A stretch of 64,000 nucleotides of DNA from Sminthopsis crassicaudata (lineage: Eukaryota), in the NCBI RefSeq assembly GCF_048593235.1, contig NC_133617.1, forward strand, positions 627,730,958 through 627,794,957, in the 5' to 3' direction. Shown here piece after piece: positions 14,101 through 64,000 of the stretch. Under the pieces are notes generated by a model. The model was not told where the DNA came from and did no database searches. It was given only the letters and a program-made list of their open reading frames with translations. A program made the position numbers and the translations under genes. The first letter of the stretch is position 1. Each line of letters starts with the position of its first letter.

Positions 14101-14804
14101 CCTGCTCTTTCTGCTTCTACACCTTCACCCTACACCTACATCGGACACCACCAAGGTGAGCAGACAGGCCTTGTTTATCTGCCTTTCCAGGAAGGGAGGG
14201 ATAAAGATATAAGAGGGGAGGTAGAAGAAAGGATTCGTGAAATCCAGCTGAGGGAATTTGGCAAGGAAGATTTTAGGCTGGTGGCAAGAAAGAATTGTAG
14301 GACTGAATGGGAGACAGAAGGGGCTGCCTGATAGATGTTGCCCGTTTGCTGCATCTGGTCTGCAAAAGGTTTTAATGTGGTTTGTAGGCCATAGCTGCTG
14401 CCTGAATTTGATTAAGTTTGTTGCTCCATTCTTTGCACTCTGTCCTTGGGCTTGTCACCTATAACCTGACTTGTGGCTTATCAAGCTGTGGTTAACTGTA
14501 GTAGCGTGCCAATTAGGAAGGGTTAAAATAGGAATGAGGCTGATAAGGTGGGAGTGAGAGCCTGTGAGAAATGAAAACTAACTTGAGAAACAGGCACATG
14601 CTTTGAAAGGGCCAGTGTTTAACATTGGACTTTGTGGTTTGTTGTTTTTACATAAATGTGGCCGCCTCCTTCAAAGAAGTTGGACAGCTCTAGACTAAGG
14701 GATAGATGGCTAGGTTCTAATGTTCCTGATCTCTTCTCTTTCCCCTTCAACCAGTTCAATCTCATCCCTCCCAGCAGCTCCCCTTCCACCCCCCGGGGAA
14801 CTGA
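4835..14804 (+). CDS. ATXN2L: Ataxin-2-like protein (Lsm, LsmAD, PAM2 motif), 1044 aa for the VQSHPSQQLPFHPPGN-ending isoform
   Basis: Exons (all GT-AG, phases consistent): 4835-5121, 6944-6980, 7157-7213, 7299-7370, 7764-7914, 8322-8446, 8668-8759, 8972-9172, 9477-9658, 9793-9900, 10190-10381, 10483-10554, 10828-10898, 11013-11317, 11438-11507, 11911-12057, 12202-12274, 12446-12633, 12818-12947, 13048-13169, 13369-13581, 13966-14155, 14755-14804; total 3135 nt. Motifs: MLKPQP start, VFEGVYNNSRMLHFLTAVVGSTC (Lsm), FRQRELRAAQLAREIE (LsmAD), KSTLNPNAKEFNP (PAM2). Confidence 0.97.
8054..8170 (+). mobile_element. MIR/CORE-type SINE
   Basis: tRNA-like head 'ggtagttcagtgggtggagcacagaccctggagtcaggaga...agttcaaatc'. 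Confidence 0.7.
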
Positions 14805-15283
14805 AGATGGTCCTGGCCGTCACTTGAGAGACTTCCTTGAGTGGAGGGAGGAGTGACCTATATCTCTTCCCCCAGCAGCTCGGACCAGTACTCTAGCCCT
14901 CCACTCCCCTCCCCAGCCCACCCCACAGGGGGAGTAGGGAACTCCTACCAAGCACCTTGAATGGGGCAGGGGGTGGGGTGTGGGGTAGTTTGGGGGGACC
15001 TCAAGGCGGGGCCAGGGTCTAGAGGGAGTGGAGGATTCCTGCTTGGCCCATCCTTCCTCCTACCCCTCCCCTTCATTCCCTGCCATCCCTGCTGGAGACG
15101 GAAGATCTTTTATTTTCTATTATTTATAACCTCAGACTTGGGTTCCCTTATCCTTCTTTCCCATTAACCTGAGACAGACACATAGACAGATGCCCCACAA
15201 GGATGGTTGACAAGGACTTTTACTTTTTATTACATAAAAAATATTTAAAAAAAAAAAAAAACAAAAAAAAAAAACAGAAAAAA

Positions 15284-15289
15284 AATAAA
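15284..15289 (+). terminator. ATXN2L: ATXN2L polyadenylation signal AATAAA
   Basis: AATAAA at the end of the recognisable ATXN2L 3' UTR (AATAAAATTTTAAACTAACT). Confidence 0.75.
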
Positions 15290-15537
15290 ATTTTAAACTA
15301 ACTCAACATGCCTGGAATTCCCTCTCTGGGGAAAAGGACAAGTGTGACCCTAGTCTATCACAGGACCAGGGCATCAAGGAAAAATACAGAGGTAAGATAT
15401 TGGGGGCCAGAGTCCTTAAGTTGAAGGGAAGGGTGTCACTAATGAGATTTGTCTGGCTGTGTTTCCTTGATTTGATGATCCGGTGTGTGTATGTGTGTAT
15501 GTGTGTGCGTGCTCGCGCATCTCTTCCTCCCAGACAC

Positions 15538-15660
15538 AGAAGCAGAGTGGTATAGTGGAGAGTATAGAGAAGTTCTTTAATTATTATATTACTTGTGTGA
15601 CCTTAAGCAATTATTTAACCTTTTTAGCCCTCGGTTTCCTCATATGTAAAATGGTGTTGG
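15538..15660 (+). mobile_element. MIR SINE fragment
   Basis: CORE motif 'tgtgtgaccttaagcaattatttaacc...cctcggtttcctcatatgtaaaatgg'. Confidence 0.7.
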
Positions 15661-16403
15661 GGGAAGGAGGGGAGTTGAACTGGATGAGCTTTTTATTAAA
15701 GATAATTTTGCAATTTATAATTCAAAATATTATGAAGTAGTTGCACTCCAATTGAAAGAAATTACCTGCCTTCTCTTCTTGGGCTTGCTAGCTAGAATAA
15801 AGAGAATCAGTCTTATATCTTGTGGCTCTTGGCAAAGGTTCTGATCTTGTATAACTAGATTGTGATGGTCTAGGTCACTAGTTTGAAATTGTTTAATATC
15901 TCATTTATGCCCTGATGGCTTGTCTAATGGAGGCTAGGGTTTAAGAGGACTGATCTGTCAAGTCTTAGCTTAGGAACTATTTCTCAGTTCTATTATTAAC
16001 TTGTAGTTATAATCTGGTTTGTGGGTTAAATAAGGCAATATGTGATATATTTCAAAAAGTGAATTATTGCCATGATTCTTACTTTTGATTGAGTATGGGG
16101 ATTTGTAAGGTTTTCAAAAGAGCAGTGGAGTCAGGTTAAAAAAAAAGGTTTAGCTTTTAGGAAAAGTAAACACTAATTGCTGTGAAGACATTTTAGGCAT
16201 TTCATGGCTTTTCTTTGGTGTGTGGATAAAAATAGCTAGACATAGGTTTTTGCTTTATTAAAGAGAGAATCTGGTTATAGATACTGCATTTTCATGTTTA
16301 TTCCATGATTGCTCTTGAAGGAATGAAAGCAGATGTTTGTGTAATTCCACTCTTACTCTATTGTGATAATATTCCAAAGACTCTAAGATATTTGGGGAAT
16401 TTT

Positions 16404-16576
16404 ACCTGGCATCATGGCATACACGGGTAATAACTACTATTGGGGAGGCCGAGACTTGCGAATCATTTGAGCTTGGGAATTCTCAGCTGCAGGGGCTGAT
16501 CAAGCTGTCTAAGAGAGGGGTAAATTAACAAGAAATGGAGCAGGCCAAGGCTTCCATGTCAGACAACAGTGGGATT
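16404..16576 (+). pseudogene. Degenerate 7SL (SRP RNA)-derived retrocopy with an internal deletion
   Basis: Resembles the 7SL 5' Alu domain (ggaggccgagacttgcgaatcatttgagc...ggaattct) and the S domain (ctaagagaggggtaaa...gaaatggagcaggccaag...cagtgggatt). Confidence 0.75.
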
Positions 16577-16799
16577 TGTTCTTGTCCTGGTTTTTGTACT
16601 GCTATAGGGGAATTTCTTTTAAAATAGGATTTATCAATCATGTTTACTTTTTGGGCACATTTTAAATAATGGGACGACTTGAGTGTATAATGAGGCAACA
16701 AACACTCTTCTTCCTTGCAGTGCTCTTGGATTGTTGGACCACTCAAATTAGAAGCTTCTGTCTTTTAAGTTCCTTTCATTAATTCAGATTGCAGTCCAT

Positions 16800-18510
16800 A
16801 TGTTTGATGTGTATCCTCCCATATTTTAGCACAAAAGGTACATAACTCAAGTGTCCTGTACCTTTTTTCTCTTGACCAGTGGAACACTAGCTTCCTATCT
16901 TAATATGTATTCATCTCTTCCTATTTATTTGATGACATCTTTTACATAAACCTGCTCTTTTTTGAAGTTGCCTATTACTTTTACTATATTATAGTTTGCT
17001 CACACTGTGCCTTTATATCATCTTTGTGTTGAGTTTTTGTTTGGCTACATACCAAAATAGCAACACTTAGGCAAATATTTCTGAATACCAATATATTGCC
17101 TTTGTTTCTTAGATTTGATGCTTATTGGGGGCAATTTCCAAAAGGTAATTCCATGTCCCCCCTAATTCAGATCTGGACTTAACTTGTTTGTCCATCTGTA
17201 TGTACTGATGCACAAGTGCTAGATTGTTGAGCAAAATGCATACCATGCCATCAGGGCAAGATATCCTATATCCACTTCCAGTTTTTGCTATGTAGATGGT
17301 CAAAAGCATATCCTTGGGTGATTATGGATTTCTTCTAGAAACTATGAATTTCCGGGGCTAAATGCAAACAATATGTCATTTTTAAGAAAAACATTTAAGA
17401 TTTTTAAGTGTTCTCTTAAATTTGGACTCCTTAAAGGAGAATATATTGGCAAGTATATATCTATCCATTTTATCCTCACCTAAAAATTTATAATCAGAGG
17501 GGGTAATTAAGCAACAGAAAGAAAAAACCCTCTTTTTTGATTTTTTTTTTTTTTTAAATAATTTTGATGTATAGATTGACAGATTCTGGAAGAATATTCT
17601 AGTATTTAGTCAATAAAGTACAGTGGGTTTTAAAATGTATTTTTCATTTCCTACTCATTCTCTCACTTAAGATGCCTTCATTTTGTGTTTATAACTCATT
17701 TTGTACAGAGTGTATTGTCACATGTCACTAGTTTGGTATTATGGGGCATTTTATTTTTTATTAATAAGGTCTTTGGTATTTCTCTCCATATCCTCTAGCA
17801 TGTCCCCTCTAGCATGAATTCTTTCTGGCAGTTTTCCCCATCTTGGTTCTAAAATAATGTTATTTCTCTCTTTTCTGAATAATTTGGACATATTAAATAC
17901 TTACTAAATGCTTTTTTCATTCTGTGAACCTGTTCATCAAGCCAGGGTTCAAAAATTGTACATGCATCAGTACAGGTGGTTCAAATGTTCTTGATGGGGA
18001 AAAAATTCATTCAAATATTTTCAAATCTTTTTCATTTTTCTAATGATTGCTCTCATTCCATTTTCATCCTTGAGTACTCTTTAGTTTACTTGACTTGGAT
18101 CTTTTGTAAAGCTTTCTTTAAATAGGTTCTCCTCTCAGCTTTGAGAGAAAATAGTGTTCATAATCATCCATCATTATTCTTAACAGTTTTGCCTTTGGAT
18201 GATTTCTTGGCAAGTAAAATGTTTGGTAATTAAGGGATTTTCTGGTCTCTTCTGGCAATTTACATTGATTAAACTTTTGCATTGTAATTGGTGACGATAT
18301 TTTTGATGCTTATTTTCCCTTTTTTTGGTCAATTGCTGTTAAAGTAGATCAGGACAGAATTGTTTATATCATATGTACCATAACATTTTTTATCTCCATT
18401 ATTAGTCTCTTTACTAATTCTGATCTTCATGAAGTGTAGGATAGTTCTTTTCATGGAAAATACTTTTAAGTTTTGTCTTTTTTTCTCAGTACCTGTGACA
18501 ATGTCTGCCA
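16800..18510 (-). mobile_element. Decayed RTE-clade LINE fragment
   Basis: Minus strand resembles marsupial RTE reverse-transcriptase coding sequence (e.g. 'aatacattttaaaacccactgtactttattgactaaa', 'gatgattatgaacactat'); short remnant ORFs at 17109-17309 and 18329-18511. Boundaries approximate. Confidence 0.6.
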
Positions 18511-19709
18511 AAGAAGGTATTTAATGATTGGTTCTTACTGTTTTTTTCTGAATGTAGGTTTCTTTATTTATAAAATGGGAATAATTAAACTCCATGTGGT
18601 TGTTAAAAAGAAAAAGACTTTTAAAGCCTTAGAAAGCAGTATAACTAGGCCAGTTGGGATAGTGTGAGTGTTGGATTATGTGTAGACCAAACAGTGTAGG
18701 TTGCTTACATTTAACTGCCTTTGTTAAATTAGAGTCTGGATGAAGTGAAAGGCAAATTAAAAAACAGAAAAACTTTTGACCATTTCTGATACATCCTGGC
18801 TGGACAAGTAAATCACTTAATCTTTCTATGCTTTAGTCCAGTAGTGGTGTCAAACTCCAGTAGAAACATTGACTTAGAAAACCCAAAGTTAACATTCTGT
18901 TGAATTGAGTTTTTATTTTAAATATCTCCCAATTACATTTTCATCTGATTGTAGCACTGAGAAGTTTGGGCTTGAGAGTTAGACAACTCTGTTCTCTTGT
19001 AAAACTTCTAAGTTATAGAGAAGTATCAGTCTGCCCTTGGTAGAAAGGAAGTTTTCTTCACTGAGGATTTCTTTATTAAAAAAAAAAAAAAAAAAAAATC
19101 AGATCCAGATCTACTCCCAACTTTCCATCGGGATCTTTTTTAAAAATCTAGTAGTTTGTAACACTTAACACTTAATGCCTAATTAAATTTCATCTAACTT
19201 GATTTGTCCTATTCTAATCTATTAATTTGGATCTGTCAGTATTCTGACTCTTCTTCAGTCTTTATATAGTCAATCTATAAATTTGTTGTTTTAGCTTCAA
19301 GACATCAATTCCTTATTTAAAAAAAAATCTTAATAGTTCAGCTAAACCACAGACACACCTATCATGTCTGACTAAGAGTTCTACCAGTAATGTTCAGTTT
19401 CATATTTGCTCTTTCCATTTATACTTTAGTCATTGTATGTTATTTCTCTGTTTCTGCTTACTTCACTGCATCATTTTACATCCTTACATTTCCTGAATTT
19501 CTCATGGTACAGTAAGATTTTGTTAACTTCCTACATTGTGATTTCTGGGTTAATACAACAAAAGATGCTGCTGTGAATTACTTTGAGTAATGTTTTGTTT
19601 TTGACCTCCGTGTGGTATATTCCTTAACAGATCTTTGGAATAAAGAGGGTGGGTCAGAAAATTCAATGATTAATCCAAAATATGATCTTGTTATTAAAAA
19701 TTTGTATCC

Positions 19710-20450
19710 TTTCAATCAGATAAACATTTAAGTGCATACTATGTGGGAGGCACTAGGAATACAAAGACAAAAGAAATCAAAAAGAAACCTGCCCTCAAGC
19801 ACTTATATAGGACACATCTACCTTTGTATTTATAAATGCATGTAAAATAAATACAAAGCATTTGAAGTGAAAGAAGATCAAGGAGTAAAGTGTCATATAG
19901 AATCTGATACCTGAGTCAAGTTCTGAGGTGCAGGGATGAGTGACAAGCTTGGGTGAAAACTTTGAAATCAAGAGTATATGGTATTTCTAAGGTGTGAGAA
20001 AGCCAGTTTGGGCTGGAGTTTGAGCTAAGTAGTGACATGACTGAATCTGTGCTTTTAAGATATCACTGGTAGTTTATGTGGAGGCAAAGAGTCTAATCAC
20101 AAAACTTGTTTTAAAAGTCCATAAGTGATGGAGTGTGAGTGATTAGATGAGTTAATCACCAAGGAAAGATGATGGTAGGTTGTAAATACAGATGACTGAA
20201 AAGGTTAGTGGTCTTCATAGAAATAGGGAAGTTTGGAGTAATGTAACACTGAGTCTGGATATATACAAATCTGGGAGTTTATAGAAATTTAAGCCAACTG
20301 GATGTGGAGGTAGAGCAGAGAAAGGGCCCAGGACAATATTTTAGGGGATATAACCCGCAATTAGGTGACATGATAAATGGATGATGATCAAGCAAAGGAG
20401 ATGGGTTGACCAAACTGGAATACAGAAGAACAGAGACTGGAAAAGGAGAG
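19710..20450 (-). mobile_element. L2 LINE 3' remnant
   Basis: Reverse-oriented L2 tail 'aaacatttaagtgcatactatgtg...gcactaggaatacaaagac...cctgccctcaag'. Confidence 0.6.
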
Positions 20451-22227
20451 ACTATCTGGAAGGAAACAGGTCCAAATTAACAATTTGGAATACTTTTAGG
20501 CCATGCTAATGACTAGTAGTAACGAAAAAAATCATCTTTTTGAAAATAGCATTTCAGGAGAGGTTTTGCATTTTCAAAAATTGGAACTTCTCACAAAGAC
20601 TAGCTATGCTGTTTCTGAGCACTCATCTCCCTAAGACTTTTTGTCAAGTGACCTAAGATTAAATTTTTAGATCTGATAATCTTTTTATTTTTCTTTGCCA
20701 TTCTCAAAGCAAAATAGGATATAAAGTAGTTCTAGACATGTTTTCTTATACCACATGTCCCAAATGTTGTATCTGTTCCCTTTGTTCTATCCCTGAGATA
20801 GTTTTAAATTTTAGTTGGAAGCAGGTACCTAAGCAGCATCCAGGATCAAGACAATACAGTGGTTGGAGGAATATACATGTAGAAAGATTGTGACTGTTAC
20901 TCTTGCAGAAGTGTTTCTTTGGGTAGAAACCTAAAATTCACACCTTACATAATAGATGGGATCGCCAAGAGCTTTAGGTGATGAATGTATCAGGCTTTCT
21001 AGTGTAATTGAATTTGCCTCAGAAAATCCAGTGACACAATGACTTTTAGAATCATCAAAATTTCAGGTAACCCCAAGAATCAGAAAAAGATTTCAGGATA
21101 TTGGATAAATTTAATAAGTGATCAGATCTGTGATCTAAGTGACCATTAAAAAAAAAAAAGGTCCACTTTAGCACTACAGGTTGGCTATATCCATCCCCTC
21201 TATGTCTCAGTATATCCTACTAGAGATAGCAGGAAAGGCTTAAGGTCTTGTTTTTATCTTACTTCCTGAACTTGAGCTGCTTGTGTTTCAAATCAGTGAG
21301 CAGTCAAAATCTCAATGTCACAATTACTTAATGTCCCTATTTTCTTTGGTCATATCTGTTTTGCTTGTGTTTGTGGTTTATGCTGAGTATAACCAACCAC
21401 TGAAGGTAGAGGGAGAAATTACCTATTACCAGATACATCCTTAATTATTAGCATACATATCATTTATACCATTTGACTTGTTTTGAACAAATATGTTTTG
21501 GAGGTAGAAGGGATCTTTAGGATAAGTACTGAGAATGGGAAAAGTAAAGTTCACAATTCATTAAAGAAATAATCTAACATATATTTTTTTCCTTGTGAGT
21601 TTAGAAAAATGAGGAATGTGGTTAAAATCACTACGCCATCCACTTCTGTGTTTTCTGGAAAGCCCAAGTTGTAGTTACCTCTGCTTGCAAAAGGAATATT
21701 GTTAGAATGAAGGGAACAGGAGGTGGGAGGAATAAGGCCCTCAATCTAATGTGAACAGAGAGAATGAAGAGTTTTTAAAGTGTTAATTATGGACTTTGCC
21801 TGTGATCACAGATCATATAATCTTGTTGCCCAGAAATTCATATTAAGCTTCTTTCTTCACAGTTTCTTTCCAGAATTCTTATTAAATCCTTAGAATTGAA
21901 CTAGTTTAAAATGGGGGGAGATGGAAAGGAGAGGTGGAAGGTCACCAAGAAAGGCAGGGAAGGTGGCGCATATTAAGTCTTCCAGCTATTATCTATATCT
22001 TGTACAGGGAGTCAGACCAGTTCAGGATTATATAGAATCACTGGGAGCAGGCTGACCCAAATTGAAGAGTTAATTCTCTGACCACCCTCTCTTAAGATAT
22101 TCCCAGATGAACTCAATCAGAATGAATAGAGAGCCCCAGGGAGAATTAGTCTCCCAACTGGTGTCATCCCTTTTAACTCTTATCAGCACAAAGCAACAGT
22201 GAGTGTTCTCCCATATGTATCCAAATT

Positions 22228-22408
22228 GGGGGTGGGGAGAAGGGAGGAGAAACAGCTGAAAAGCACTGTGGATAGAGCATGGGCCCTAGAGTTAGGAGAA
22301 CCCGAGTTCAAATCTTGCCTCAGGCACTTGACATTTCCTAGCGTTATGAACCGTGGGCAAGGCATTTAGCCCCAATTATATCATCAAAAAACAAACAAAA
22401 AAAAAACC
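22228..22408 (+). mobile_element. Marsupial CORE-SINE inserted into the exon 5 copy of the TUFM pseudogene
   Basis: 'gtggatagagcatgggccctagagttaggagaacccgagttcaaatcttgcctcaggcacttgac...' with an A-rich tail; both flanks align to contiguous TUFM exon 5 sequence. Confidence 0.85.
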
Positions 22409-23379
22409 TCAAGTGAGCAACTCATATCTCTAGCTCTAGTAGTTTCACTATCTCATTGTCCTGGACAAGCACCTACCTTGTTCACAAACACATGTGTGCT
22501 CCACATCAATCTGGTGGAAGAAAATTGCTCCTGTTAATAAGGTTTACATCCAAAGTTTAGAAAACAATTTAAATGCCATTTAGGAATGAACTTGACCCCA
22601 GTGAACCTGTTCCCCACATCGGAGATGTTTTAAAGAGTGCCTTCCTCTTCCCTATACCTTGCCCACTATTCAACCCCAAATATTGGTCTCTAGTAAGGTC
22701 TCCTGAAAGAGACTGGCATCTTATTTTGCAAACAGCAGGTGCTTCCTTGTATGAAGAATGGGGCCATTTATTGGTTACCACTACCAAAATGTTGCTTTCC
22801 AACCATGGCTTCTAGAGTCTATTTGAGCATGCTAATTTTGCCTGTCCTGTCTAGTGGTGTGTGTTTTAGTACTTTCTCCCACGATTTCCCTTTTTTTTAG
22901 GCTCCAGATTTTTCAAGTTTCTAACTTTTTCTACTCTCTTCTTAGCAGTAGCCCAGATTATAACTGTGACACCTCAGTATCTTCCCCAGATACAGAGCTC
23001 CCAGTTTCTTCAGCCACCTCAATGCCTAGATGTGTCCCCCCTCATTTAGGACAGTCAGTGTAAATAATGTGTAGAATGGCTCTGCTAGAACTTGCAACCA
23101 GAGGGGAGGGAATGAGAGTCCCATAGGGGGTAAGTACACTGTTCTCTCCCAGATCAACTTCTGTGCCCTTGCAGTGCTAGAAAACAAGATTTTGACTGCA
23201 TACCCACAGAGCCCAGTTACAAGGCCAATAACTGAGCTACTTCAAACTGGTTCCTAGACTCAAAAGCCTCTCAGAATGGTGAGCCAAATGGGATGTCTTG
23301 GGGGCAAAGTGATCTATCTCAAAGTTTGAAATAATCTCCACCCTTGATTAGAGCTAAAAAGCACTGCACTATTTGCAAA

Positions 23380-23612
23380 TATTTAGTGGTACAGTGGAGA
23401 TGGAACAAACATTGGGTCTGGAGTCAGTACTCTTGAGTTCTCAAGACACTTAACTAGGTACGTGACCTTATGCAAGTCAATTAATCTCTTTGCATCAAGT
23501 TTTTTGCGGAGTAAGAGCACCTACCTCACAGGGTTGTTGTGAGGATCAAATGAGATACTATTTGTAAAAGGCTTAACACAGTGCCTGGACATAATTAGGT
23601 GCTTAATAAATG
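23380..23612 (+). mobile_element. MIR SINE with L2-type tail
   Basis: 'cctacctcacagggttgttgtgaggatcaaatgagata...acagtgcctggacataattaggtgcttaataaatg'. Confidence 0.75.
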
Positions 23613-24209
23613 CCTCTTCACTTCCTCATTCTTGGTGGTGACTGCTGTCAGCATGTTTATAGTCCATGTGGCATATGATGCCAACATTGTGTGGTTTGTA
23701 CATTGTGTGGTTTTGTCCCTCAAGCCTTATTGGCTGCCACAAGTTCAAAATGGGAAGGTTGGGAAGGGATTCCATCAAGAATTGGGCCTGTGTAGAAAAA
23801 AATTTGTCATCAAAGTGTTCCGAACTTCTTTCTCAAACCCTCATTTTTACTGGCTCTTGATCAAGTTCGAGATCAGGAATATTAACTACTCAAAAAGCTG
23901 TGCAACTGGCAGCATTGAGTGGGAAAGAGAAGGAAACCACTTACTAAAGACGCATTTATTAGGCACCAGCTATGTGCCATGCACTCCCCTGGGTGTTGAC
24001 ACTTGACTAGTGATAATGTACTGACCTTCCGTCCCTTTGGCAGTCACTCCTGCATTCCCTGCTTATTTCCATCTCTTAGGTCCCTCGTTTCCCCTCGGGG
24101 GACACTTTACCTTATTCATTCCCTTGTTTCCCAACCCCTTCCCCGTATATTTTTTTTTTTTTTTTTTTTTTTTAATATCATTGGATAGACCTTGCCCCCA
24201 CCTTGCCCT

Positions 24210-24740
24210 CCTACTTCACTCCCGTGGAAGCCTGGATTCCCTCCACGCTCCATTCCTTCTTACTACGCCGTCTGTGTACCCTTGGCGTAAGGGGACCCGC
24301 AGCTTCGTCACGCCCCGCCTCTGGGGTCCGGTGGCGATGAGTAGCAGTTGTTAGGACAAGAAGGGGAAAGGGATCACCGTAAAGGAAATTAGGAAGGAGA
24401 CATGCTGTGTTCTGGAGGTGGAAAGATCTGCAGTATTCTACAAGATAGCTTAACCGCATCCGGAAGTGACGTCACGTGAGGGCGAGCAAGAACTACGTCC
24501 GAAACTCTTCAAGGATTTCCGGCGGAGCGGGGTCCGCGGAAGAAACTTGAAGACATTCTAGGCCACAGCGGGATATCAGATCCCACAATGCAATACCAGG
24601 AAGGACAAAGAAGCCCCGCCCCCTCTGCCATAGCCTCACGGGATTTGTAGTTTGCTGAGGGCATATTCAAAAGGACCTGTAATATAAATTGAGGCACTTT
24701 CGCGGGACCTTATAAAATACTATTGGACTACCCCGACCCT
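24210..24740 (-). promoter_or_regulatory. Orphan CpG island, the duplicated TUFM promoter
   Basis: About 30 CpG by hand count in ~530 bp; CCGGAAGTGACGTCACGTG 24460-24478, TCCCACAATGCA 24581-24592, GC box 24614-24622, ACTACA (minus strand) 24646-24651. Confidence 0.85.
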
Positions 24741-25939
24741 GGGCAGTAGGTATTTTATGCCTGAAGTATATTGTTAGCTTCTTTAAAGCTCCTTTCCTGG
24801 GCCGGCAATACTTAGAAATTCACACAAAAGTACTATTTGTCAGGCCTTGTCCTTTTGACAGACTACCTGCTACCCCTCAGTTCCTAAAAAAGGGGGAAAC
24901 AAGGCCGTTAATACTTAGCCTGAGCTTACTGCACATCACTGCCTGCCCTCCAAATCCATCCCCTTTCCACATCTTTGATCTCATGTCATTTTTGGTGGAT
25001 CTCAAAGTTCCAAAGTGGGTGTTGTAGTGGGTTGCAAAGATCAATGACTGTCAGTCTTGAAATCAGGTGACCTGAGCTCAAATTCCCTTTCTGACATAAC
25101 GTGTTACTCTGCTTCACAATACCAGTGACCCCATGTTGTGAAGGAAGTTTTGAAAACTTGTGAGCCATTAATAAAAGACTGAACTGGTCAAGCATTCAAG
25201 GTCCACCATCATCTGATCTCTGAAATTTTTACTTTTCCAATTCCTTTTCCCTTATATTTTTGAAACTCAGATAAAATGTTTACGTCTTTTGTTTTCCAGC
25301 TTATATTTCTTCTCTGGAACGTCTTCACCTAACATCTCTTTGAAGCAAATCTAGCTTCAGACTCAACTAAAATTCATCTTCCTGAACCCTTCCCCCAAAT
25401 AACTCAACCAGAAGCAGAGAATTCTCAAAGTACTTTATTATATTTTCTATGTGACTTTTAAGGATAAGGACTTATAACTTCATAGATTCCCTATAGGGAC
25501 ACTCCCTCTACCCTTGCTCTGCAACTTTAGGGTTACTTAGAGCAGTGTCAAGAGGTTCAGAGTGTTCAGAGTTCAGGTCTTCTGACTCTCTGATAAAGCT
25601 GTTCTCTGTCACATTGTTCTGTATTGTGATTAGATGTACATGGCTGTTCAAAAAAAATTGTTCTCAAAAAGGTACAGTACCGGGTGTATTTATAAGTAAG
25701 TTCTATCATCAAATAACACCAATATTCCATAAACACTTTGCAAAATGGTAAGGATCTCATCAAGGATATCCTTTGATCATTTTGAAAGTACTCTTAAACC
25801 TAAACTGGAGGGTGACAGAAATTTCTAATATCCCTAATGAACAGATGTTAAAAAAGCTATAAAGTAGATCACATCAAGCTGGATTTATGCTAAAAGTACA
25901 GGATTGATTCAACATAAAAAAAAGTTGCATAGACAAACC

Positions 25940-26100
25940 CAAACATCCCAATAACTGGGGATTCACTATTTGATAAAACTGAAAGTAAGTCTAGCAAAAA
26001 TTAGGTTCACAGCATACTTTCCTAACCTGGTTTCATAAATTAAAAATGATCTCTGGGTTAGACAAATAGCTCTTACCATATACCAAGTTAGATTCCAAAT
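25940..26100 (+). mobile_element. L1 ORF2 fragment
   Basis: 'ggattcactatttgataaaactg...cttaccatataccaag'. Confidence 0.5.
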
Positions 26101-27159
26101 GTATATTTTTGCATGTTGATCTCACTCCCTTTGTACACTCTTCCCCCCCCCCAAAAAAAAAATTTAAGAGCAGTTTTGTCTATGAAGTTAACTCAGCACT
26201 TTCAAGGAAAAAACTTGGGAAAATAGGAATCCATTAAGACAATGCTATTTGGGGGAGAGCATTTTCATCTATCCGAGAAAATAGGCAAAAGATGCTGGAA
26301 CGAGAGTGCTGGGCTGTTTCTCCTCCCCCCACACTGCTCCAAATCATGACTAGATACCACAGAGAGGATTTGCCTCATTTTGCCTTGAAAGGAGAGGGGA
26401 AAGGGTTAGTCCCTATATTTAGCTGGCCTAGGAAAAAATACTTCTCTAAACACCATAAACCCTCTTTCTATCCTTACGGGTTCTACCAGCATCCCAAAGC
26501 GGGGTTAGACTGGAAGTGAGAAACAACCAATGAATTTAGCTTGGGGTGGGCAGGCTTTTCAAACCATGTCTCATCTTCCTATACCCTCAGGAACCAAAGT
26601 ATCTTCTCCATTTAGCAGTTTCTCATAATTCAGAGGCTTTAAGGTATTGCATTAGAATTAGAAGTCAGGAAAACATGGATTTGGATGTCTCTCCTAACCT
26701 GTATGGTAATTTACCTCTATCATTTAAAACAGTCCAAGATGCCTTCCAGCTCTGAATTTATGACCACATTTATCCTTTTCCCTAAGGATGCTTTAGAAAC
26801 CAGCTCACATTTTAAAATTCTTTGAACTCATTTCTGGGAGACAGACTCCCTAGCAATCTGATACCATCTTCTTCCATTCCTCATATTTGTGAACCCGTAG
26901 AAAGTGAAAGCTATGAAGGCTCATGTTTTTAGAAGCAGTAATTCTCTACCCTGACTGGGCAGGCTTTTTTATTTCAAGTAATCAAAAAAGAAGAGGCAGC
27001 CTAGGATGGGGGAAGGGGAGATACTCTTGGGAATTTGGAAGACCTAGGATGTCATGTTTTCTCCACTATCCCATAGGACCAATGGAATCAAGGTGTATTT
27101 CACCTGCATTTTTTCCCTCCCACTGTAAAAAGGTGTTAATCATGTCTTACTCACCTTGG

Positions 27160-27570
27160 GATTCTAGTAGTAACTCTCCATTTTCTCTCAGCAGCCCTGC
27201 TTGGTTTCGACTCCAAGGGAACATCATGCCTCACTCAGGATAAGCTGATCACCTGAAGTCTCATGACCATGCTGATTGACTGACTTGGTTTTTGATACTC
27301 AACACCTTCTCAAACCCCAAAATTGCCCCTTCTTCCATTAGACTGTAAGCTCCTTGAGGGCAGGGACTGTCTTTTTCTTATTGTATGCCCAAGGCTTAGC
27401 ACAATGCTTAGCATATTAAGTAGACCCTTTTTGTTTATTGAACTGTGTGAGGATCAAATTCAGTAATTTATACAGTGCTTTGCAAACCTTAAAGCACATT
27501 AACCAGTGTGGCTTAATGGACAGAAAGCCAGCCTTGGAATTGGTCCAGGGGTCTCTCAGTGCCTCTAGTC
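27160..27570 (+). mobile_element. L2 3' end followed by a MIR fragment
   Basis: 'attagactgtaagctccttgagggcagggactgtc...cttagcacaatgc'; 'gtgaggatcaaat'. Confidence 0.7.
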
Positions 27571-28381
27571 AATTCTATAAGGCTATTATTATACATTGTT
27601 AAAGAAGGTGCTGATGTATATTGGAAGAGGGAGTTTCCACATACAAGTCCGCTATACACACACACACACACACTGAACTGTCCAAACAAAATTTTAAACT
27701 TACATTCTACAAATAAAGGTCAGCCATTTCTATTTAATGGATCTGTTTCTTGATGTATATGATGAGGGAATTGATGGCTCTTCACAAACTCTCACACACT
27801 GTGTATTTAAATCCCTTATTAGCAATAATAACACTGATTCTATTTTATATTCCACAATACTTCTAAGCCAAATTTAAGACTTAACAAGTATGATAATCAG
27901 AAACTTTTAAAAATTCTTATACTCAGATGTACAGCACTGGTGAGGAGAACAGCAGTGGTCTTTGACTGTTAGCTTTGACTTTGCCTCTTTAGTAAATTTT
28001 ACAGTAGGGTAGTTTAGCAGCAACATTTCTGTCTTTTTGAGATGTTCATTCTTTCTTACTAACGTTTCTAGAATATGTTTGTTGGCAAAGCACTTTTTTT
28101 TCCACAATTCTTGAAGTAGGTGGTACAAATAATACTATTGTCATTTTGCAAGTAAGGAAATGAACTAGCTAGGACTAAAACTGAGGACTTGAGGAATTCC
28201 ACATCCAACTACTGTTAATGATATACCCCTGATAACACTTTAGAAGTCACTATAAAATCCCCAAAAGAAAACATCCTTAATAGAAATCTTCCATTTGAAG
28301 GTACAAATACTAGTACCCAACCTTTTAATCTCTACAACAGGAAGTTACTACACATGTTGTGTTCCGCCAACCACACAACAC

Positions 28382-28387
28382 TTTATT
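28382..28387 (-). terminator. TUFM: TUFM polyadenylation signal (AATAAA on minus strand)
   Basis: TTTATT on the plus strand, about 150 nt downstream of the TUFM stop. Confidence 0.65.
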
Positions 28388-28539
28388 TTTCCCTTAAAAC
28401 TTACAAGCCTCTCAGATCTAGGAGACATCAGTGCTACAGATGGCAGGAAAGTCTGAGGACCTTTTAAACTTCCTAAACTTGAGTTCTTGATTCAGGCCAG
28501 TGAAGTTACACAATGCTGGAAAGAAGGCTGGAGTTGCGC

Positions 28540-32268
<3,729 letters not shown>

Positions 32269-32269
32269 C

Positions 32270-32680
32270 ACGACGAGGAACGGGGGCGAGAGGGAAAGGG
32301 AGGGGATAAAGGAAACACTACAGGGAAAGGAGCGCCAGAGGAGAAAGGGACCGGGAACCGAACAGCGTGCGAAGCGCTAAGGGCACGGGGAACTGAAAGG
32401 TACTTCCGTCGGCTGGAAGTGACGTAAGAGCAGGAGAGACTATTGAGAAGCTCCCTCTAGGACCGCTGTGGCGGACTTCCTGTGCGGAGGGGATACCCGG
32501 AAGGAGACTGGACCGAAGGCCGGAGACTTAGCAGGTGGCTAGCTCCCACAATGCACCGCTAGGAACTACAGCCAAATCCCGCCCCCGCTTTGTGTTGTCC
32601 CTTGGGATTGGTGGGCTTCTGGGGAAGTTCTTACGAGACGGTTATAAACAGCCTGGCGAGACAATTTTCGTCTAGTGATC
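32270..32680 (-). promoter_or_regulatory. TUFM: TUFM CpG-island promoter
   Basis: GGAAGTGACGT (ETS/CRE) 32415-32425, TCCCACAATGCA (ZNF143/Staf-type) 32544-32555, ACTACA and a GC box nearby. Confidence 0.85.
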
Positions 32681-33429
32681 GTGAAATCCTTTTTGCCTCA
32701 GAGATGACCCTACCAACCCCGGTGGGCAACTCATGAATGAGCGAAGGAAAGCATTTGAGTACTCTTGCAGAGAAGCTGCTCGCTTGCGTGGGCACTTTCC
32801 TCCTCGCGGGGGTGCCCCTGCAAAGAAATCTTACGTCTAGTCCCTACCCCAATCTGCTGTTAGGAGTTTGCAAAATCCTGAATATGCGAAAGAAAGATAG
32901 TCCCTATCATCACAGAGCTTACAACCTAACAAGGGCAGACAATACTAAAGGGTGTTCCATAGGAAAGGATGTTTTAATCTGGAAATTAATAGGGATGCTG
33001 AGTGGACGTGTATGGCAGCTAATTGACACACCACTTCCTGAAAGCTGGGGCAATGTTGATTTGTGTATAGGACCTAAAGCAAAAAATGGAGGGAGACTAG
33101 GTTTTGGGAAGAAGATAGTGGTTTTCAAGCAGAACTATGTAGGAGGAGGGTGGGGGGAGGGGTTAAACATGGTTGGGATTTAAGACTAAAAAACAATTCT
33201 CCAAAATTCCAAACAATATTCCAAAAGTGAGCAGGCTTGTTTCTCCAGGGTATGAGGTGAGGCCTGGGGTCTCCCCTACATCGCTCTGGAGATCCATTCT
33301 TGTTTCTGTCTGAAATCCTTCTATTAGGGAGCTTCTTCGGGGTTCCCCTTTTGAAAAGAAAATACTTCTAAAGCATTAACAAAATGTACTTAATGTGCTA
33401 GATCAACTTTTAAAATGAAGAAAGGAAGA

Positions 33430-33800
33430 CCCCCTAGTCCAAATTACTGCAGAACCTTCCTGGCTGGTTTCTTTGCTCCAATATTCTTTCTCCGATCCAT
33501 CTTGCAAGCAGATTATTTTATAAAACTTAGCTCTGATCATGTCACTCCTAATCAGAAACCTTCAGTGGTTCTCCCAAGACCTATAGCAGGCATTGTGGTA
33601 TTTTATGGAAAGAGTAATATTTGGTCTTGGAGTCCTGAGTTCAGAAATCTTTTCTGATACTTATTTAGTGTGTAATCTTGATAGATAACTTCATTTCAGT
33701 TTTCTCATCTGCAAAATAGAGAAATAGAGCTTAAATTCATAATTCATAAAGTTGTTGTGAGAAGAAAAGTATTTTCCTTAAAATTCTACAAAAATGTGAG
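33430..33800 (+). mobile_element. L2 and MIR fragments
   Basis: 'tctgatcatgtcactcct...aaaccttcagtggttctccca'; 'gagtcctgagttcagaaatc...tttctcatctgcaaaatag'. Confidence 0.6.
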
Positions 33801-34329
33801 CCATTATTATTACAGGATAAAAGCCAAACTCTTGCACCAAACTTTAGCATCTGATTCCTATTTACTTTAGGGATCTTTCCAATCTCAGCTTTCACTGTTG
33901 TCTTCTACTTTTAAACTTCAGCCAACTTGTTCCATCTGGAATGCCTTTATTTTCTCCATCTATTTAAAACCAGCCCCTGTTTAAAAGGCCCAGCTCAAAT
34001 TCTTTCTACTTAGTGAATTTTCTACCAAAACCTGAGTCAGAAGGGCACTTTTCTAAGAATTATCAAAGTACTTTGTACCCCTACCGTGACTATTATATTT
34101 GTAACAGGAGTGATCGAGACTCCTAATCAATATGATGAGTCTCCTGATCAATTAGATAAGACCTTTGTTAGAAGAGCATACTTCACATAGAGCACAAGTG
34201 CCAAAGTCTCTTGTTGAGAGTACTAGTGATTTTCTCTTATTGGTCTTCAGTGATTAGGGCTGCCTTAAAAGATGAATGTGTACTGAGAATCAAGGATATA
34301 TCAGAGGAACCATCTTAATAAAGTCTATA

Positions 34330-35060
34330 AAAATGATAGTCCTTGTGAAAATCTATCTCTGGTGGAATTCTGGGTAGAATTTATAATCAAACAAGGAAGA
34401 AAGGAAAACAAGTTGGGCAATTTTGATTACATGAAATGTAAAAGCTTTTGCACAAACAAAACTAATGAAATTAAAATGAGAAAGGAAAAAAGAAAATTAG
34501 GGAAAAAATCTGCAACAACATTTTTTGATAAAGGTTTCATTTCCAAGATATATAAGGAATTAATTCAATTTATAAGAGCCATTCCCCAATAGATAAACAA
34601 AGGACATGAGCAAGCAGTTTTCAAAGGAAGTCATCCAAAATATCAACAATCATATGATAAAATTTTCCAAATCATTAATAGTGAAATGTGAATTAAAGCA
34701 GCACTAAGATTTCACCTTATACCCATCAGATTGGCAAAGATGACAAAAAAGAAAAAAATGACAAATGTTGGAGGAGTTGAATGAAAACAGGCATGCTAAT
34801 GCACTGTTAGTGGAACTTTAAATTGATCCAGCTATTCTGGTAAATAATATAGAACTATGTCCCCAAAGTCTTTAAATTTTGCATATCTTTTACTTAGGAA
34901 TACTACTAATAGGATTATAAAGGAAACAAAGAAGAAAAGGATCCACGCGTACAAAAATATATCATCACTTTTCATAGTAACCCCAAACTAGAAACTAAGG
35001 GGATGTATGCCCATTTATGTCAGAACAGCTAAATTAATCTTGGTATATGAATGTCATACT
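34330..35060 (+). mobile_element. L1 ORF2 3' fragment
   Basis: 'ttttgattacatgaaatgtaaaagcttttgcacaaacaaaac...gataaaggtttcatttccaagatatataagg...atttcaccttatacccatcagattggcaaagatg'; remnant ORF 34362-34592. Confidence 0.85.
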
Positions 35061-35630
35061 TATGACAAGCCACGGAGACATATGTAACACAAGTGTCAAA
35101 GAACTTCTTTGTGATCACAAAGCTACTAAGTACTCAAACCCCAGCCTGATATTCTTCACCATGCCATTCTATATTAATAACAAAAGGCTTTCCTTAACAC
35201 AGAGGATAGTTGCAGAATCCCAGAAACCAAACACCATCCACATTGGAGGAGTCAAAAGTGACCTGAGTCCGTGGATTTCTCAACTTTATTCAAGTCCGTA
35301 AGTACCAAAGCTTTGGCTCTCCCTGAAGTTCCTGCAAAAACTAGTCAGCTCATGTCATGTTATGTAGTCCCAGAAGAGAACGTACAAGGATCTGACACAA
35401 TTTCCTCATTTAACAGAAGAGGAAACTGAGGCACAGAATGACTAGGACCAGAATTTTAATTCAGGTTCTCCACTTCTCTTTCTTAGGACATCCTGCTGTC
35501 TGATAGACCAGTGACCTGGCGAGAGCCAAAGTAGATGTTGTTCAGAGGGGCACCGAGGGTAGAGCTCTCCTCGGGCTGCTCCATTGAGAATACCACAGTC
35601 TCTTAGGTCGGGTCAGCTCCTGAGCCACTG

Positions 35631-35687
35631 GATACCCTCTCCTCAGGGGAGATACCCTCTCAGGGGAGATACCCTCTCCTCAGGGGA
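35631..35687 (+). repeat. Three-copy 17-20 bp tandem repeat GATACCCTCT(CCT)CAGGGGA
   Basis: Units at 35631-35650, 35651-35667 and 35668-35687. Confidence 0.9.
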
Positions 35688-35761
35688 TTAAGGAGAGCCC
35701 AAGGCATCTCAGGGGCTTCTGGAGAAGGTCTCTCCCAGAAAAAGGACAAGGTCATGAACTC

Positions 35762-36020
35762 AGGGACAGCTGGGTGGCAGTGGCTAGTGCTGGGTCTGAA
35801 GTCAGGAAGACCTGAGTTCAAATTTCATCTCAGAAAAAGTATTAGCTACGTGACTCTGAACAAGTCTTCCCCCTTTGCCTCAGTTCCCTCATCTGTAAAA
35901 TGAGCTGCAGAAAGAATGGCAAACCACTCCAATATCTTTGTCAAGAAAGCCCCAAACAAAACAAAATAAAACTCCAAAAAGGGGTCACGAAGAATGGATA
36001 AGACAGAAAACGACTGAACA
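35762..36020 (+). mobile_element. Marsupial MAR1-type CORE-SINE with RTE-derived tail
   Basis: 'ggacagctgggtggcagtgg...gaagtcaggaagacctgagttcaaat...gcctcagttccctcatctgtaaaatgagctg...gaatggcaaaccactccaatatctttg'. Confidence 0.8.

Positions 36021-49028: not shown

Positions 49029-64000
<14,972 letters not shown>

What the first reader, a model, noticed from the sequence alone, without database searches (positions are those of the whole stretch)
21200..24700. Whole-locus tandem duplicate of TUFM decayed into an unprocessed pseudogene
Seen: exon copies 2, 3, 4, 5 and 7, intervening intron sequence, 3' UTR and promoter all align collinearly and in the same orientation with functional TUFM 7.2-8.0 kb downstream. 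Example: 22431-22560 'ctagctctagtagtttcactatctcattgtcctggacaagc...ttgttcacaaacac...gtgctccacatcaatctggtggaagaaaattgctcc' vs 30328-30432. Lesions: start codon lost, P-loop eroded and frameshifted, +1 frameshift in exon 4 (ILVVVTN then shifted), exon 6 largely deleted, exon 7 donor GT changed to GC, SINE inside exon 5. I know of no such copy between ATXN2L and TUFM in human or mouse (from recall). Inference: an old, lineage-specific duplication of a normally single-copy nuclear gene for mitochondrial translation.
Basis: partly seen in the sequence, partly recalled or inferred. Interest (0 to 1): 0.8.

Follow-up and report, generated by a model that had tools for sequence, protein, structure and literature searches.

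The report
Ancient marsupial TUFM unprocessed pseudogene
The fat-tailed dunnart has a dead second copy of TUFM, the mitochondrial translation factor EF-Tu gene, next to the working one; it still has introns and a promoter, it is shared with antechinus, Tasmanian devil and koala and so predates their split, and only its CpG-rich promoter still looks preserved.

Summary
Window 21220-24731 (minus strand), with weaker upstream homology to about 25436, aligns collinearly and in the same orientation with functional TUFM at 28434-34074. The match covers the promoter, exons 2, 3, 4, 5 and 7, introns and the 3' UTR, so this is an unprocessed duplicate and not a retrocopy or a repeat artefact.

- **Not dunnart-specific.** Orthologous, equally dead copies lie at the same place in Antechinus, Tasmanian devil and koala. 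Paralogues group by copy, not by species (100/100 support).
- **Old lesions.** Loss of the start codon, a stop codon in exon 5, loss of exon 6 and several deletions are shared by all four species. The gene died before Dasyuromorphia and Diprotodontia split, about 60 Ma. A rough clock puts the duplication at 1.35-2.3 times that age.
- **Absent from the one placental checked.** Water buffalo has no copy.
- **Not directly adjacent to its parent.** A spacer of about 3 kb holds a conserved, apparently marsupial-specific terminal exon of ATXN2L. The pseudogene therefore lies antisense inside an ATXN2L intron.

The former promoter keeps a CpG island (observed/expected 0.73-0.85 against about 0.1 around it) and transcription-factor-like motifs in all four species. 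It may still be active, but I obtained no read-level RNA evidence.

The scan had already noted this promoter on this same window (s1-153287), not on other DNA. This is an ordinary kind of feature; interest is modest.

The parts
21220..24731 (-). psiTUFM: the recognisable body of the duplicated TUFM locus, from 3' UTR remnant to promoter
   Evidence: A collinear chain of blastn HSPs to 28434-32700. Orthologous to L001 about 17.6-21.2 kb, L002 about 17.7-21.4 kb and L004 17971-21465.
24760..25436 (-). Upstream flank of psiTUFM that still shows weak homology to the region 1.3-1.8 kb upstream of functional TUFM
   Evidence: Dunnart 25240-25436 matches 33854-34074 at 60% identity, E 0.008. The collinear koala counterpart, L004 17354-17893 against 7653-8213, is clear at E 7e-28.
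24150..24750 (-). Former TUFM promoter and exon 1, retained as a CpG island
   Evidence: GC 0.51 with 30 CpG, observed/expected 0.78. Antechinus 0.85, devil 0.73 and koala 0.54, against 0.03-0.18 in all flanking segments.
24460..24650 (-). Core promoter motif blocks shared with functional TUFM in all eight sequences
   Evidence: The blocks are an ACTACA/ZNF143-like box (24650-24640), a GC box (24622-24613), an SBS-like block (24592-24581), two ETS sites (24544-24534 and 24522-24513), and an E-box plus CRE plus ETS (24478-24460). See the eight-sequence alignment and coordinates. Among the four pseudogene copies, motif columns vary in 10 of 68 against 52 of 123 elsewhere in the core. The blocks were chosen after seeing the alignment.
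24349..24351 (-). Former start codon, now ACA
   Evidence: The alignment shows the ATG lost in all four species' pseudogene copies.
23624..23699 (-). psi-exon 2 (P-loop exon) with deletions of 3+1+1 nt in the GHVDHGKT codons
   Evidence: Local alignment score 49 against a shuffle maximum of 26.
23049..23087 (-). psi-exon 3 remnant, with a 5-bp or larger deletion at its 3' end
   Evidence: Score 30 against a null of 26. The multi-species alignment makes the homology clear.
22702..22810 (-). psi-exon 4
   Evidence: It carries a 15-bp deletion shared by all four species, a dunnart-only +1 insertion, and a donor changed from GT to AT in dasyurids.
22405..22531 (-). End of psi-intron 4 and the 5' part of psi-exon 5, with a CGG-to-TGA stop shared by the dunnart, devil and koala copies (TAA in antechinus)
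   Evidence: Score 153 against a null of 28; alignment.
22268..22406 (+). CORE-SINE-like element with an A-rich tail, inserted in psi-exon 5
   Evidence: Other copies lie at 54278-54411, 41493-41598 and 41235-41325. It is present in dunnart, devil and antechinus and absent in koala.
22011..22182 (-). 3' part of psi-exon 5 and the start of psi-intron 5
   Evidence: HSP to 30057-30243.
21686..21874 (-). psi-exon 7 and psi-intron 7
   Evidence: HSP to 29408-29598. Deletions of 2 bp and 3 bp are shared by the dunnart, devil and koala copies; the antechinus copy lacks most of exon 7 and shows only the 3-bp one. The donor at 21799-21798 reads GC in dasyurids only.
21220..21299 (-). psi-3' UTR remnant
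   Evidence: Aligns to 28434-28503, just below the TUFM stop codon.
28387..32268 (-). Functional TUFM, from start codon at 32268 to poly(A) signal at 28387
   Evidence: The exons were mapped with GT-AG boundaries. The locus is identical to L005, which encodes XP_074165558 of Sminthopsis crassicaudata.
27191..27256 (+). Distal terminal coding exon of ATXN2L, lying between the two TUFM copies
   Evidence: The annotated ATXN2L coding range ends here in the dunnart. The same distance from TUFM is annotated in 8 other marsupials. The peptide is identical in four species, and conservation peaks over 27200-27800.
14751..14804 (+). Proximal ATXN2L last coding exon, shared with eutherians
   Evidence: It encodes the same C-terminal peptide as the buffalo ATXN2L coding end.

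Best explanation
A segment of at least 5.6 kb was duplicated in the same orientation about 3 kb beyond TUFM's own 3' end. The segment held the whole TUFM gene with its introns, its 3' UTR and about 1.8 kb or more of upstream DNA. The copy landed in what is now the last intron of the long ATXN2L isoform, antisense to ATXN2L.

The duplication happened in an early marsupial ancestor: after the split from placentals, before the split of Dasyuromorphia and Diprotodontia, and probably around or before the crown marsupial radiation. The copy lost its coding capacity before the Australian orders diverged. By then it had lost the start codon, acquired a premature stop, lost exon 6 and taken several frameshifting deletions. 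Since then it has drifted at the neutral rate and picked up lineage-specific damage: a SINE and splice-site changes in dasyurids, and a further frameshift in the dunnart. It makes no EF-Tu.

One part behaves differently. The old promoter is still a CpG island with its ETS, CRE, GC-box and ZNF143-like sites in all four species. From this I infer, but have not shown, that it has stayed unmethylated in the germ line and may still fire as an orphan promoter.
For: **Shown.**
- Collinear same-strand homology includes introns, promoter and 3' UTR.
- Controls exclude chance and repeats.
- Independent DNA runs from a second sample hold 0.95-0.96 of the region's words. The window is identical to the S. 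crassicaudata assembly.
- Orthologous copies exist in Antechinus, devil and koala.
- Maximum-likelihood trees separate four functional from four pseudogene sequences with 100/100 support, on all columns, on introns only and on exons only.
- Disabling lesions are shared across species. The pseudogene copies also share derived substitutions, PMPQTREH to PIPHTRKH.
- Buffalo has no copy. Its ATXN2L coding end lies 2.95 kb from the TUFM stop, against 13.7 kb in the dunnart.
- Between species, the pseudogene body is conserved at background level, while the ATXN2L terminal exon stands out.
- CpG observed/expected is 0.73-0.85 in the three dasyurids (0.54 in koala) at the old promoter, against about 0.1 around it. 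Motif blocks are retained.

**Inferred: the age.** On intron columns the stem between the two clades is 0.15 substitutions per site, and the koala-dasyurid path within a clade is 0.24-0.31. This puts the duplication at about 1.35-2.3 times the ordinal split. The Australian orders radiated after about 60 (54-72) Ma (abstract of PMC4419798).
Against: - Opossums, Dromiciops, bilby, possums, wallaby and monotremes could not be read because no DNA was returned. Whether the copy is marsupial-wide is therefore untested.
- Absence in placentals rests on one species.
- The date depends on strongly unequal rates: dasyurids evolve 3-4 times faster than koala here.
- No duplicate of the ATXN2L terminal exon is found beside the pseudogene. 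A simple head-to-tail tandem event does not explain the layout without a later deletion.
- For the promoter, overall divergence in the core between koala and dasyurid copies (K2P 0.26-0.29) is no lower than in the pseudogene body. The motif blocks were picked after seeing the alignment. RNA-labelled runs cover the unduplicated spacer as fully as the pseudogene.
Confidence: 0.93

Rival explanations
1. The pseudogene is a living non-coding gene. Its retained CpG-island promoter drives a long non-coding RNA, antisense to the ATXN2L intron, or acts as an intronic regulatory element. This function would explain why the promoter survived while the exons decayed.
For: - The CpG island persists in four species, against fully decayed flanks.
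- 25 of 30 CpG positions are shared among the dasyurids, and 9 among all four copies.
- ETS, CRE, GC-box and ZNF143-like blocks are retained.
- RNA-labelled runs hold 0.82-0.97 of the region's words.
Against: - The same runs hold 0.83-0.98 of the unduplicated spacer. That coverage is explained equally well by ATXN2L pre-mRNA, by TUFM read-through or by mislabelled runs.
- The read-laying run failed, so no transcription start, splice junction or strand is known.
- Sequence conservation of the island is not above background.
- Koala's observed/expected of 0.54 is below the usual 0.6 threshold.
Confidence: 0.4
2. The duplication is recent and specific to the dunnart or to dasyurids, and only looks old because of fast decay.
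For: Dasyurid branches are 3-4 times longer than koala branches, so raw divergence overstates age.
Against: Koala carries the orthologous copy with the same lesions. The tree groups sequences by copy with 100/100 support.
Confidence: 0.01
3. It is a processed (retrotransposed) TUFM pseudogene that happened to land next to its parent.
For: None beyond the lack of exon 6 and exons 8-10.
Against: - Introns 3, 4, 5 and 7 are aligned: 686 intron columns are shared by all eight sequences.
- Promoter and upstream DNA are homologous.
- The apparent exon 6-7 junction in koala is the 3' end of intron 6.
Confidence: 0.01
4. It is an assembly artefact, a false duplication or a collapsed haplotype.
For: The devil assembly does contain a suspicious 100%-identical second copy of this whole region. 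This shows that such artefacts occur.
Against: - The two dunnart copies differ by 20-40% and by many indels.
- The copy is present in four assemblies of four species.
- DNA runs from another sample hold it.
Confidence: 0.005

Closest known systems
Unprocessed (duplicated) pseudogenes, as catalogued for example by GENCODE (from my own knowledge)
   Same: A segmental copy of a gene that keeps exon-intron structure and promoter, lies near its parent, is disabled by frameshifts, stops and lost exons, and drifts neutrally.
   Different: The parent is a normally single-copy housekeeping gene for mitochondrial translation. The copy is very old (older than the roughly 60 Ma ordinal split) yet still alignable. 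It sits antisense inside an intron of the neighbouring gene.
Human TUFM processed pseudogene (TUFMP1; from my own recollection, not checked here)
   Same: A non-functional copy of the same parent gene.
   Different: That one is a retrocopy on another chromosome, without introns or promoter. This one is a DNA-level local duplicate with both.
Orphan CpG islands and transcribed unprocessed pseudogenes (from my own knowledge of the literature; no paper on them was read here)
   Same: A CpG island away from any annotated protein-coding start that retains promoter-type motifs and is conserved as an island across species.
   Different: Activity (hypomethylation, H3K4me3, transcription starts) has not been shown here. 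Only sequence composition and motif retention support it.

Membership tests
Unprocessed (duplicated) pseudogene | Homology to the parent extends through introns and flanking non-coding DNA | tested here: met
   Introns 3, 4, 5 and 7, the promoter, the upstream flank and the 3' UTR all align.
Unprocessed (duplicated) pseudogene | Disabling lesions prevent translation of the parent-type protein | tested here: met
   Start codon lost, in-frame stop in exon 5, frameshifts in exons 2, 3, 4 and 7, and exons 6 and 8-10 missing.
Unprocessed (duplicated) pseudogene | No purifying selection on the former coding sequence | tested here: met
   - The exon-column stem (0.16) is not shorter than the intron-column stem (0.15).
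- Pseudogene crown branches on exon columns are 2-5 times the functional ones.
- Cross-species identity of the pseudogene body is at background level.
- A formal dN/dS was not computed because too few intact codons remain.
Processed pseudogene (retrocopy) | Lacks introns and the parental promoter; has a poly(A) tail and target-site duplications | tested here: not met
   Introns and promoter are present. There is no poly(A) tract at the 3' end of the homology.
Tandem (head-to-tail, contiguous) duplication | The two units abut, so everything between the copies is itself duplicated | tested here: not met
   About 2.9 kb between the pseudogene's upstream flank (25436) and the TUFM 3' end (28387) has no paralogous counterpart, and neither does the ATXN2L terminal exon inside it. 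Same orientation and proximity are met.
CpG island (Gardiner-Garden and Frommer criteria, from my own knowledge: at least 200 bp, GC at least 0.5, observed/expected at least 0.6) | Composition thresholds | tested here: met
   Dunnart 601 bp, GC 0.51, observed/expected 0.78; antechinus 0.85; devil 0.73. Koala reaches only 0.54.
Active (orphan) CpG-island promoter or transcribed pseudogene | Germ-line hypomethylation, H3K4me3, and a mapped transcription start with a stranded transcript | tested here: inconclusive
Word-sharing with RNA-labelled runs is not specific to the pseudogene.

The most novel reading that the evidence does not exclude
The promoter of a gene copy that died more than 60 million years ago has been kept alive across Australian marsupials as an orphan CpG-island promoter inside the last intron of ATXN2L. 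It sits 2.4 kb from a conserved terminal exon of ATXN2L that was absent from the one placental checked. It would fire antisense to ATXN2L, and possibly in both directions, and could influence the choice between the proximal and distal ATXN2L 3' ends.
Probability: 0.3. Interest if true: 0.55.

Novelty: new member of a known kind. Interest (0 to 1): 0.33.

Why it matters
- TUFM is normally a strictly single-copy nuclear gene. This locus shows that a full genomic duplicate arose once in early marsupials and was discarded almost at once, which fits dosage or redundancy constraints on mitochondrial translation factors.
- The copy is a dated block of neutral DNA with a parent beside it, present in several orders. 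That makes it a convenient internal yardstick for lineage-specific substitution rates (dasyurids 3-4 times koala here) and a rare genomic character for marsupial phylogeny.
- It also corrects the local annotation. The pseudogene lies inside an ATXN2L intron that exists only because marsupials use a distal terminal exon.
- The retained CpG island is a clean natural test of whether promoters can outlive their genes. That part is still unproven.

Tried and rejected
1. **Read-level RNA evidence.** I did not resend those positions by any route.
2. **Word-sharing with sequencing runs as a proxy for expression.** RNA-labelled runs hold 0.82-0.97 of the pseudogene. The control spacer 24900-28300 is held equally well, 0.83-0.98. 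I therefore dropped this as evidence for an independent transcript. The region is annotated ATXN2L intron, and some 'RNA?' labels are guesses.
3. **Rfam scan of 19-36 kb.** Nothing found.
4. **A duplicate of the ATXN2L terminal exon beside the pseudogene.** This would fit a simple tandem unit. None was found in dunnart, devil or koala.
5. **Homology of the remaining spacer with TUFM's upstream region.** Only the block next to the promoter matches.
6. **DNA for bilby, brushtail possum, grey short-tailed opossum, Gracilinanus, sugar glider and tammar.** Gene tables were returned but no sequence, so the didelphid test could not be run. Gracilinanus has no ATXN2L call within 10 kb of TUFM, which is compatible with a long gap there but proves nothing.
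7. **First tblastn at E 50.** It gave only noise and was replaced by filtered runs.
8. **Global alignment with cheap gaps.** It over-aligned, so I relied on local HSPs and MAFFT blocks instead.
9. **Literature.** No paper combines TUFM, pseudogene and marsupial. The two papers that mention TUFM with Monodelphis: the ataxin-2 one, which I opened, gives the human gene order and says nothing on a TUFM pseudogene; the other, on HIV-1 antibody autoantigens, I did not open.
Full report
**What the window is.** The reverse complement of window 18541-42268 is base-for-base identical to locus L005 from assembly GCA_048593235.1, chromosome record CM109181.1. L005 encodes XP_074165558, 'elongation factor Tu, mitochondrial isoform X1 [Sminthopsis crassicaudata]'. 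The gene order ATXN2L(+), TUFM(-), SH2B1(+) matches the human order given in PMC12898128.

**Functional TUFM.** It lies on the minus strand, with its start codon at 32268 and its stop at 28542-28540. The ten exons have GT-AG boundaries:
- exon 2 ends at 31441
- exon 3: 31154-30988
- exon 4: 30713-30609
- exon 5: 30409-30245
- exon 6: 29899-29767
- exon 7: 29623-29519
- exon 8: 29406-29255
- exon 9: 29121-29002
- exon 10: from 28713

The poly(A) signal is at 28387.

**Checking the observation.**
- Default blastn of 20000-26500 against 26501-36000 returned three same-strand, collinear HSPs.
- A more sensitive scoring scheme returned ten collinear HSPs from 21220 to 24660, matching 28434 to 32624 at offsets of 7214-8064 bp.
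- With the subject reversed, only two HSPs of at most 28 bits appeared, against a best of 253 bits for the real pair. Other parts of the window matched only through one SINE.
- A self-search of 16-36 kb against the whole window showed that the only interspersed repeat in the pseudogene is 22268-22406.
- Local alignment of each functional exon against 20.5-25 kb, with shuffled-query nulls, recovered exon 2 (49 against 26), exon 3 (30 against 26), exon 4 (80 against 25), exon 5 (153 against 28) and exon 7 (73 against 28). Exons 1, 6, 8, 9 and the exon 10 coding part stayed at the null.
- About 80 bp of 3' UTR aligns: 21220-21299 to 28434-28503.

The only addition is that exons 8-10 have also been lost.

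**It is an unprocessed copy.**
- The aligned blocks run through introns. After multiple alignment of the exon 3 to intron 7 block, 686 intron columns are filled in all eight sequences.
- The promoter aligns as well.
- In koala, homology continues to 2.35 kb upstream of the TUFM start: L004 7653-8213 against 17354-17893, E 7e-28. The weak dunnart HSP 25240-25436 against 33854-34074 is its collinear counterpart.
- An apparent exon 6-7 fusion in the koala copy is in fact the end of intron 6 read in frame.
- There is no poly(A) tract at the 3' end of the homology.

A retrocopy is excluded.

**Other species.** I reached marsupial TUFM proteins in three steps: an exon 2 search of the representative library, a full-length search, and the 90% cluster of the dunnart protein. 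Genomic DNA with 10-kb flanks was returned for four species, plus the dunnart itself (L005):
- Antechinus flavipes (L001)
- Sarcophilus harrisii (L002 and L003)
- koala (L004)
- water buffalo (L006)

Six further marsupials gave gene tables only.

The dunnart interval 33461-19100 aligns collinearly with Antechinus and devil at 82-87% identity, straight through the pseudogene. In koala, window 24696-21417 aligns to L004 17971-21465. The koala copy still matches koala TUFM at 77% over 1100 bp.

tblastn with each species' own TUFM finds only short broken remnants downstream of TUFM in all four. These remnants share derived substitutions, for example PMPQTREH to PIPHTRKH.

Buffalo has no second copy between TUFM and ATXN2L. 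The marsupial pseudogenes hit only the exons of buffalo's functional TUFM.

**Order of events.** A maximum-likelihood tree of the eight sequences (992 columns) puts the four functional copies on one side and the four pseudogenes on the other, with 100/100 support. The same split holds on intron-only and exon-only columns. The duplication therefore predates the Dasyuromorphia-Diprotodontia split. There is no sign of later gene conversion.

Lesions shared by the pseudogene copies of all four species, except where noted:
- the start codon changed to ACA
- a 15-bp deletion in exon 4
- a deletion of 5 bp or more at the end of exon 3
- a CGG-to-TGA stop in exon 5 (TAA in antechinus)
- complete loss of exon 6
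- deletions of 2 bp and 3 bp in exon 7 (the antechinus copy lacks most of exon 7 and shows only the 3-bp one)

Dasyurid-only changes:
- the SINE in exon 5
- GT to GC at the exon 7 donor
- GT to AT at the exon 4 donor

The +1 insertion in exon 4 is dunnart-only. The gene was therefore already dead before the orders diverged, and no examined lineage keeps an intact second EF-Tu.

**Rough dating (inference).**
- On intron columns the stem joining the two crown nodes is 0.151 substitutions per site. The koala-to-dasyurid path is 0.238 among the functional copies and 0.313 among the pseudogenes.
- With the mean rate, the duplication is about 1.55 times as old as the ordinal split. With dasyurid-like rates it is about 1.35 times, and with koala-like rates about 2.3 times.
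- The Australian orders radiated after entry about 60 (54-72) Ma (abstract of PMC4419798). This gives very roughly 75-130 Ma.
- That range is after the split from placentals, which fits the buffalo result, and probably around or before the crown marsupial radiation. A copy in opossums is therefore predicted but not tested.
- The exon-column stem (0.160) is not shorter than the intron stem. I see no sign of a period in which the copy was kept by selection.

**Where it sits.**
- The annotated dunnart ATXN2L coding range ends at L005 15013, which is window 27256.
- There, a polypyrimidine tract and AG precede a short exon (27191-27256) ending in TGA.
- Its peptide is identical in dunnart, antechinus, devil and koala.
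- The interval 27200-27800 is the conservation peak of the whole region between ATXN2L and TUFM.
- The same 1.28-1.47 kb distance from the TUFM stop is annotated in bilby, brushtail possum, sugar glider, tammar and Monodelphis.
- Buffalo ATXN2L instead ends 2.95 kb from TUFM, at an exon whose peptide is also encoded at dunnart 14751-14804. Buffalo has no counterpart of the distal exon.

The pseudogene therefore lies antisense in an ATXN2L intron bounded by 14.8 kb and 27.19 kb. The two TUFM copies are separated by unduplicated DNA containing that exon. No decayed twin of the exon lies beside the pseudogene. The event was either not a simple contiguous tandem duplication, or it was followed by a deletion.

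**The promoter.**
- Between species, the pseudogene body is conserved only at background level.
- The 600 bp at 24150-24750 have CpG observed/expected values of 0.78 (dunnart), 0.85 (antechinus), 0.73 (devil) and 0.54 (koala). Every flanking segment in every species gives 0.03-0.18. The functional TUFM promoters give 0.56-0.78.
- 25 CpG columns are shared by the three dasyurid copies and 9 by all four.
- The eight-sequence alignment shows six blocks kept in both paralogues: ACTACA/ZNF143-like, GC box, SBS-like, two ETS sites and a CRE plus ETS site. Ten bases of the last block are invariant in all eight sequences.
- Among the pseudogene copies, these blocks vary in 10 of 68 columns, against 52 of 123 for the rest of the core (Fisher p = 9e-5). 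They match the functional consensus in 57 of 68 columns against 57 of 123 (p = 3e-7).
- I chose the blocks after seeing the alignment, so these p-values are optimistic.
- Overall divergence of the core between koala and dasyurid copies (K2P 0.26-0.29) is not lower than in the pseudogene body.

Methylated CpGs decay roughly ten times faster than other sites (my own knowledge). The simplest reading is that this island has stayed unmethylated in the germ line, as active promoters do. This agrees with the scan's separate note s1-153287. It remains an inference.

**Expression.**
- Many RNA-labelled runs hold 0.82-0.97 of the sampled words of 21200-24700. They hold the control spacer 24900-28300 just as well.
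- Both stretches are ATXN2L intron and lie downstream of TUFM on its strand. Intronic RNA, read-through or mislabelled libraries explain the coverage without any pseudogene transcript.

I draw no conclusion on transcription.

**Verdict.** This is a real, well-preserved, ancient unprocessed pseudogene of TUFM. It is shared by at least two Australian marsupial orders and absent from the one placental examined. It is a known kind of object, so interest is modest. The retained CpG-island promoter and the embedding in a marsupial-specific ATXN2L intron are the parts worth a follow-up.

Noticed in passing
window 27191-27256 (+), with conserved sequence to about 27800: ATXN2L has a distal terminal coding exon 1.28 kb from the TUFM stop. 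It encodes ...ALLGFDSKGTSCLTQDKLIT*, identical in dunnart, antechinus, devil and koala, and is annotated at the same distance in five more marsupials. It was not found in water buffalo, whose ATXN2L ends at the exon homologous to dunnart 14751-14804. It may be a marsupial-specific alternative 3' end.
   Followed up: partly
L002 and L003 (devil assembly GCA_048593225.1, CM109174.1, 125172531 and 125289699): Two places 117 kb apart carry SH2B1-5', TUFM and psiTUFM. From about position 200 to the end of the 23.7-kb loci the sequence is 100% identical, and all 144 mismatches lie in the first 200 bp next to a microsatellite. This is either a false duplication in the assembly or a very recent segmental duplication.
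   Followed up: partly
P0001 (100-aa ORF from the representative library): A marsupial-like TUFM fragment joins exon 2 directly to exon 4 out of frame, skipping exon 3. This suggests an exon-3-skipping, presumably non-productive TUFM transcript in some marsupial RNA data set.
   Followed up: no
L001-L005, trees: At this locus dasyurid lineages have accumulated 3-4 times as many substitutions as the koala lineage since their split, in both the functional introns and the pseudogene.
   Followed up: partly
window 15000-21150: The 6.3 kb between the proximal ATXN2L last exon and the pseudogene is AT-rich (GC 0.32-0.36), has no paralogous match, and aligns to the other marsupials. Its origin was not examined. 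The whole gap from the proximal ATXN2L exon to TUFM is only 2.95 kb in buffalo.
   Followed up: no
I did not look into why.
   Followed up: no
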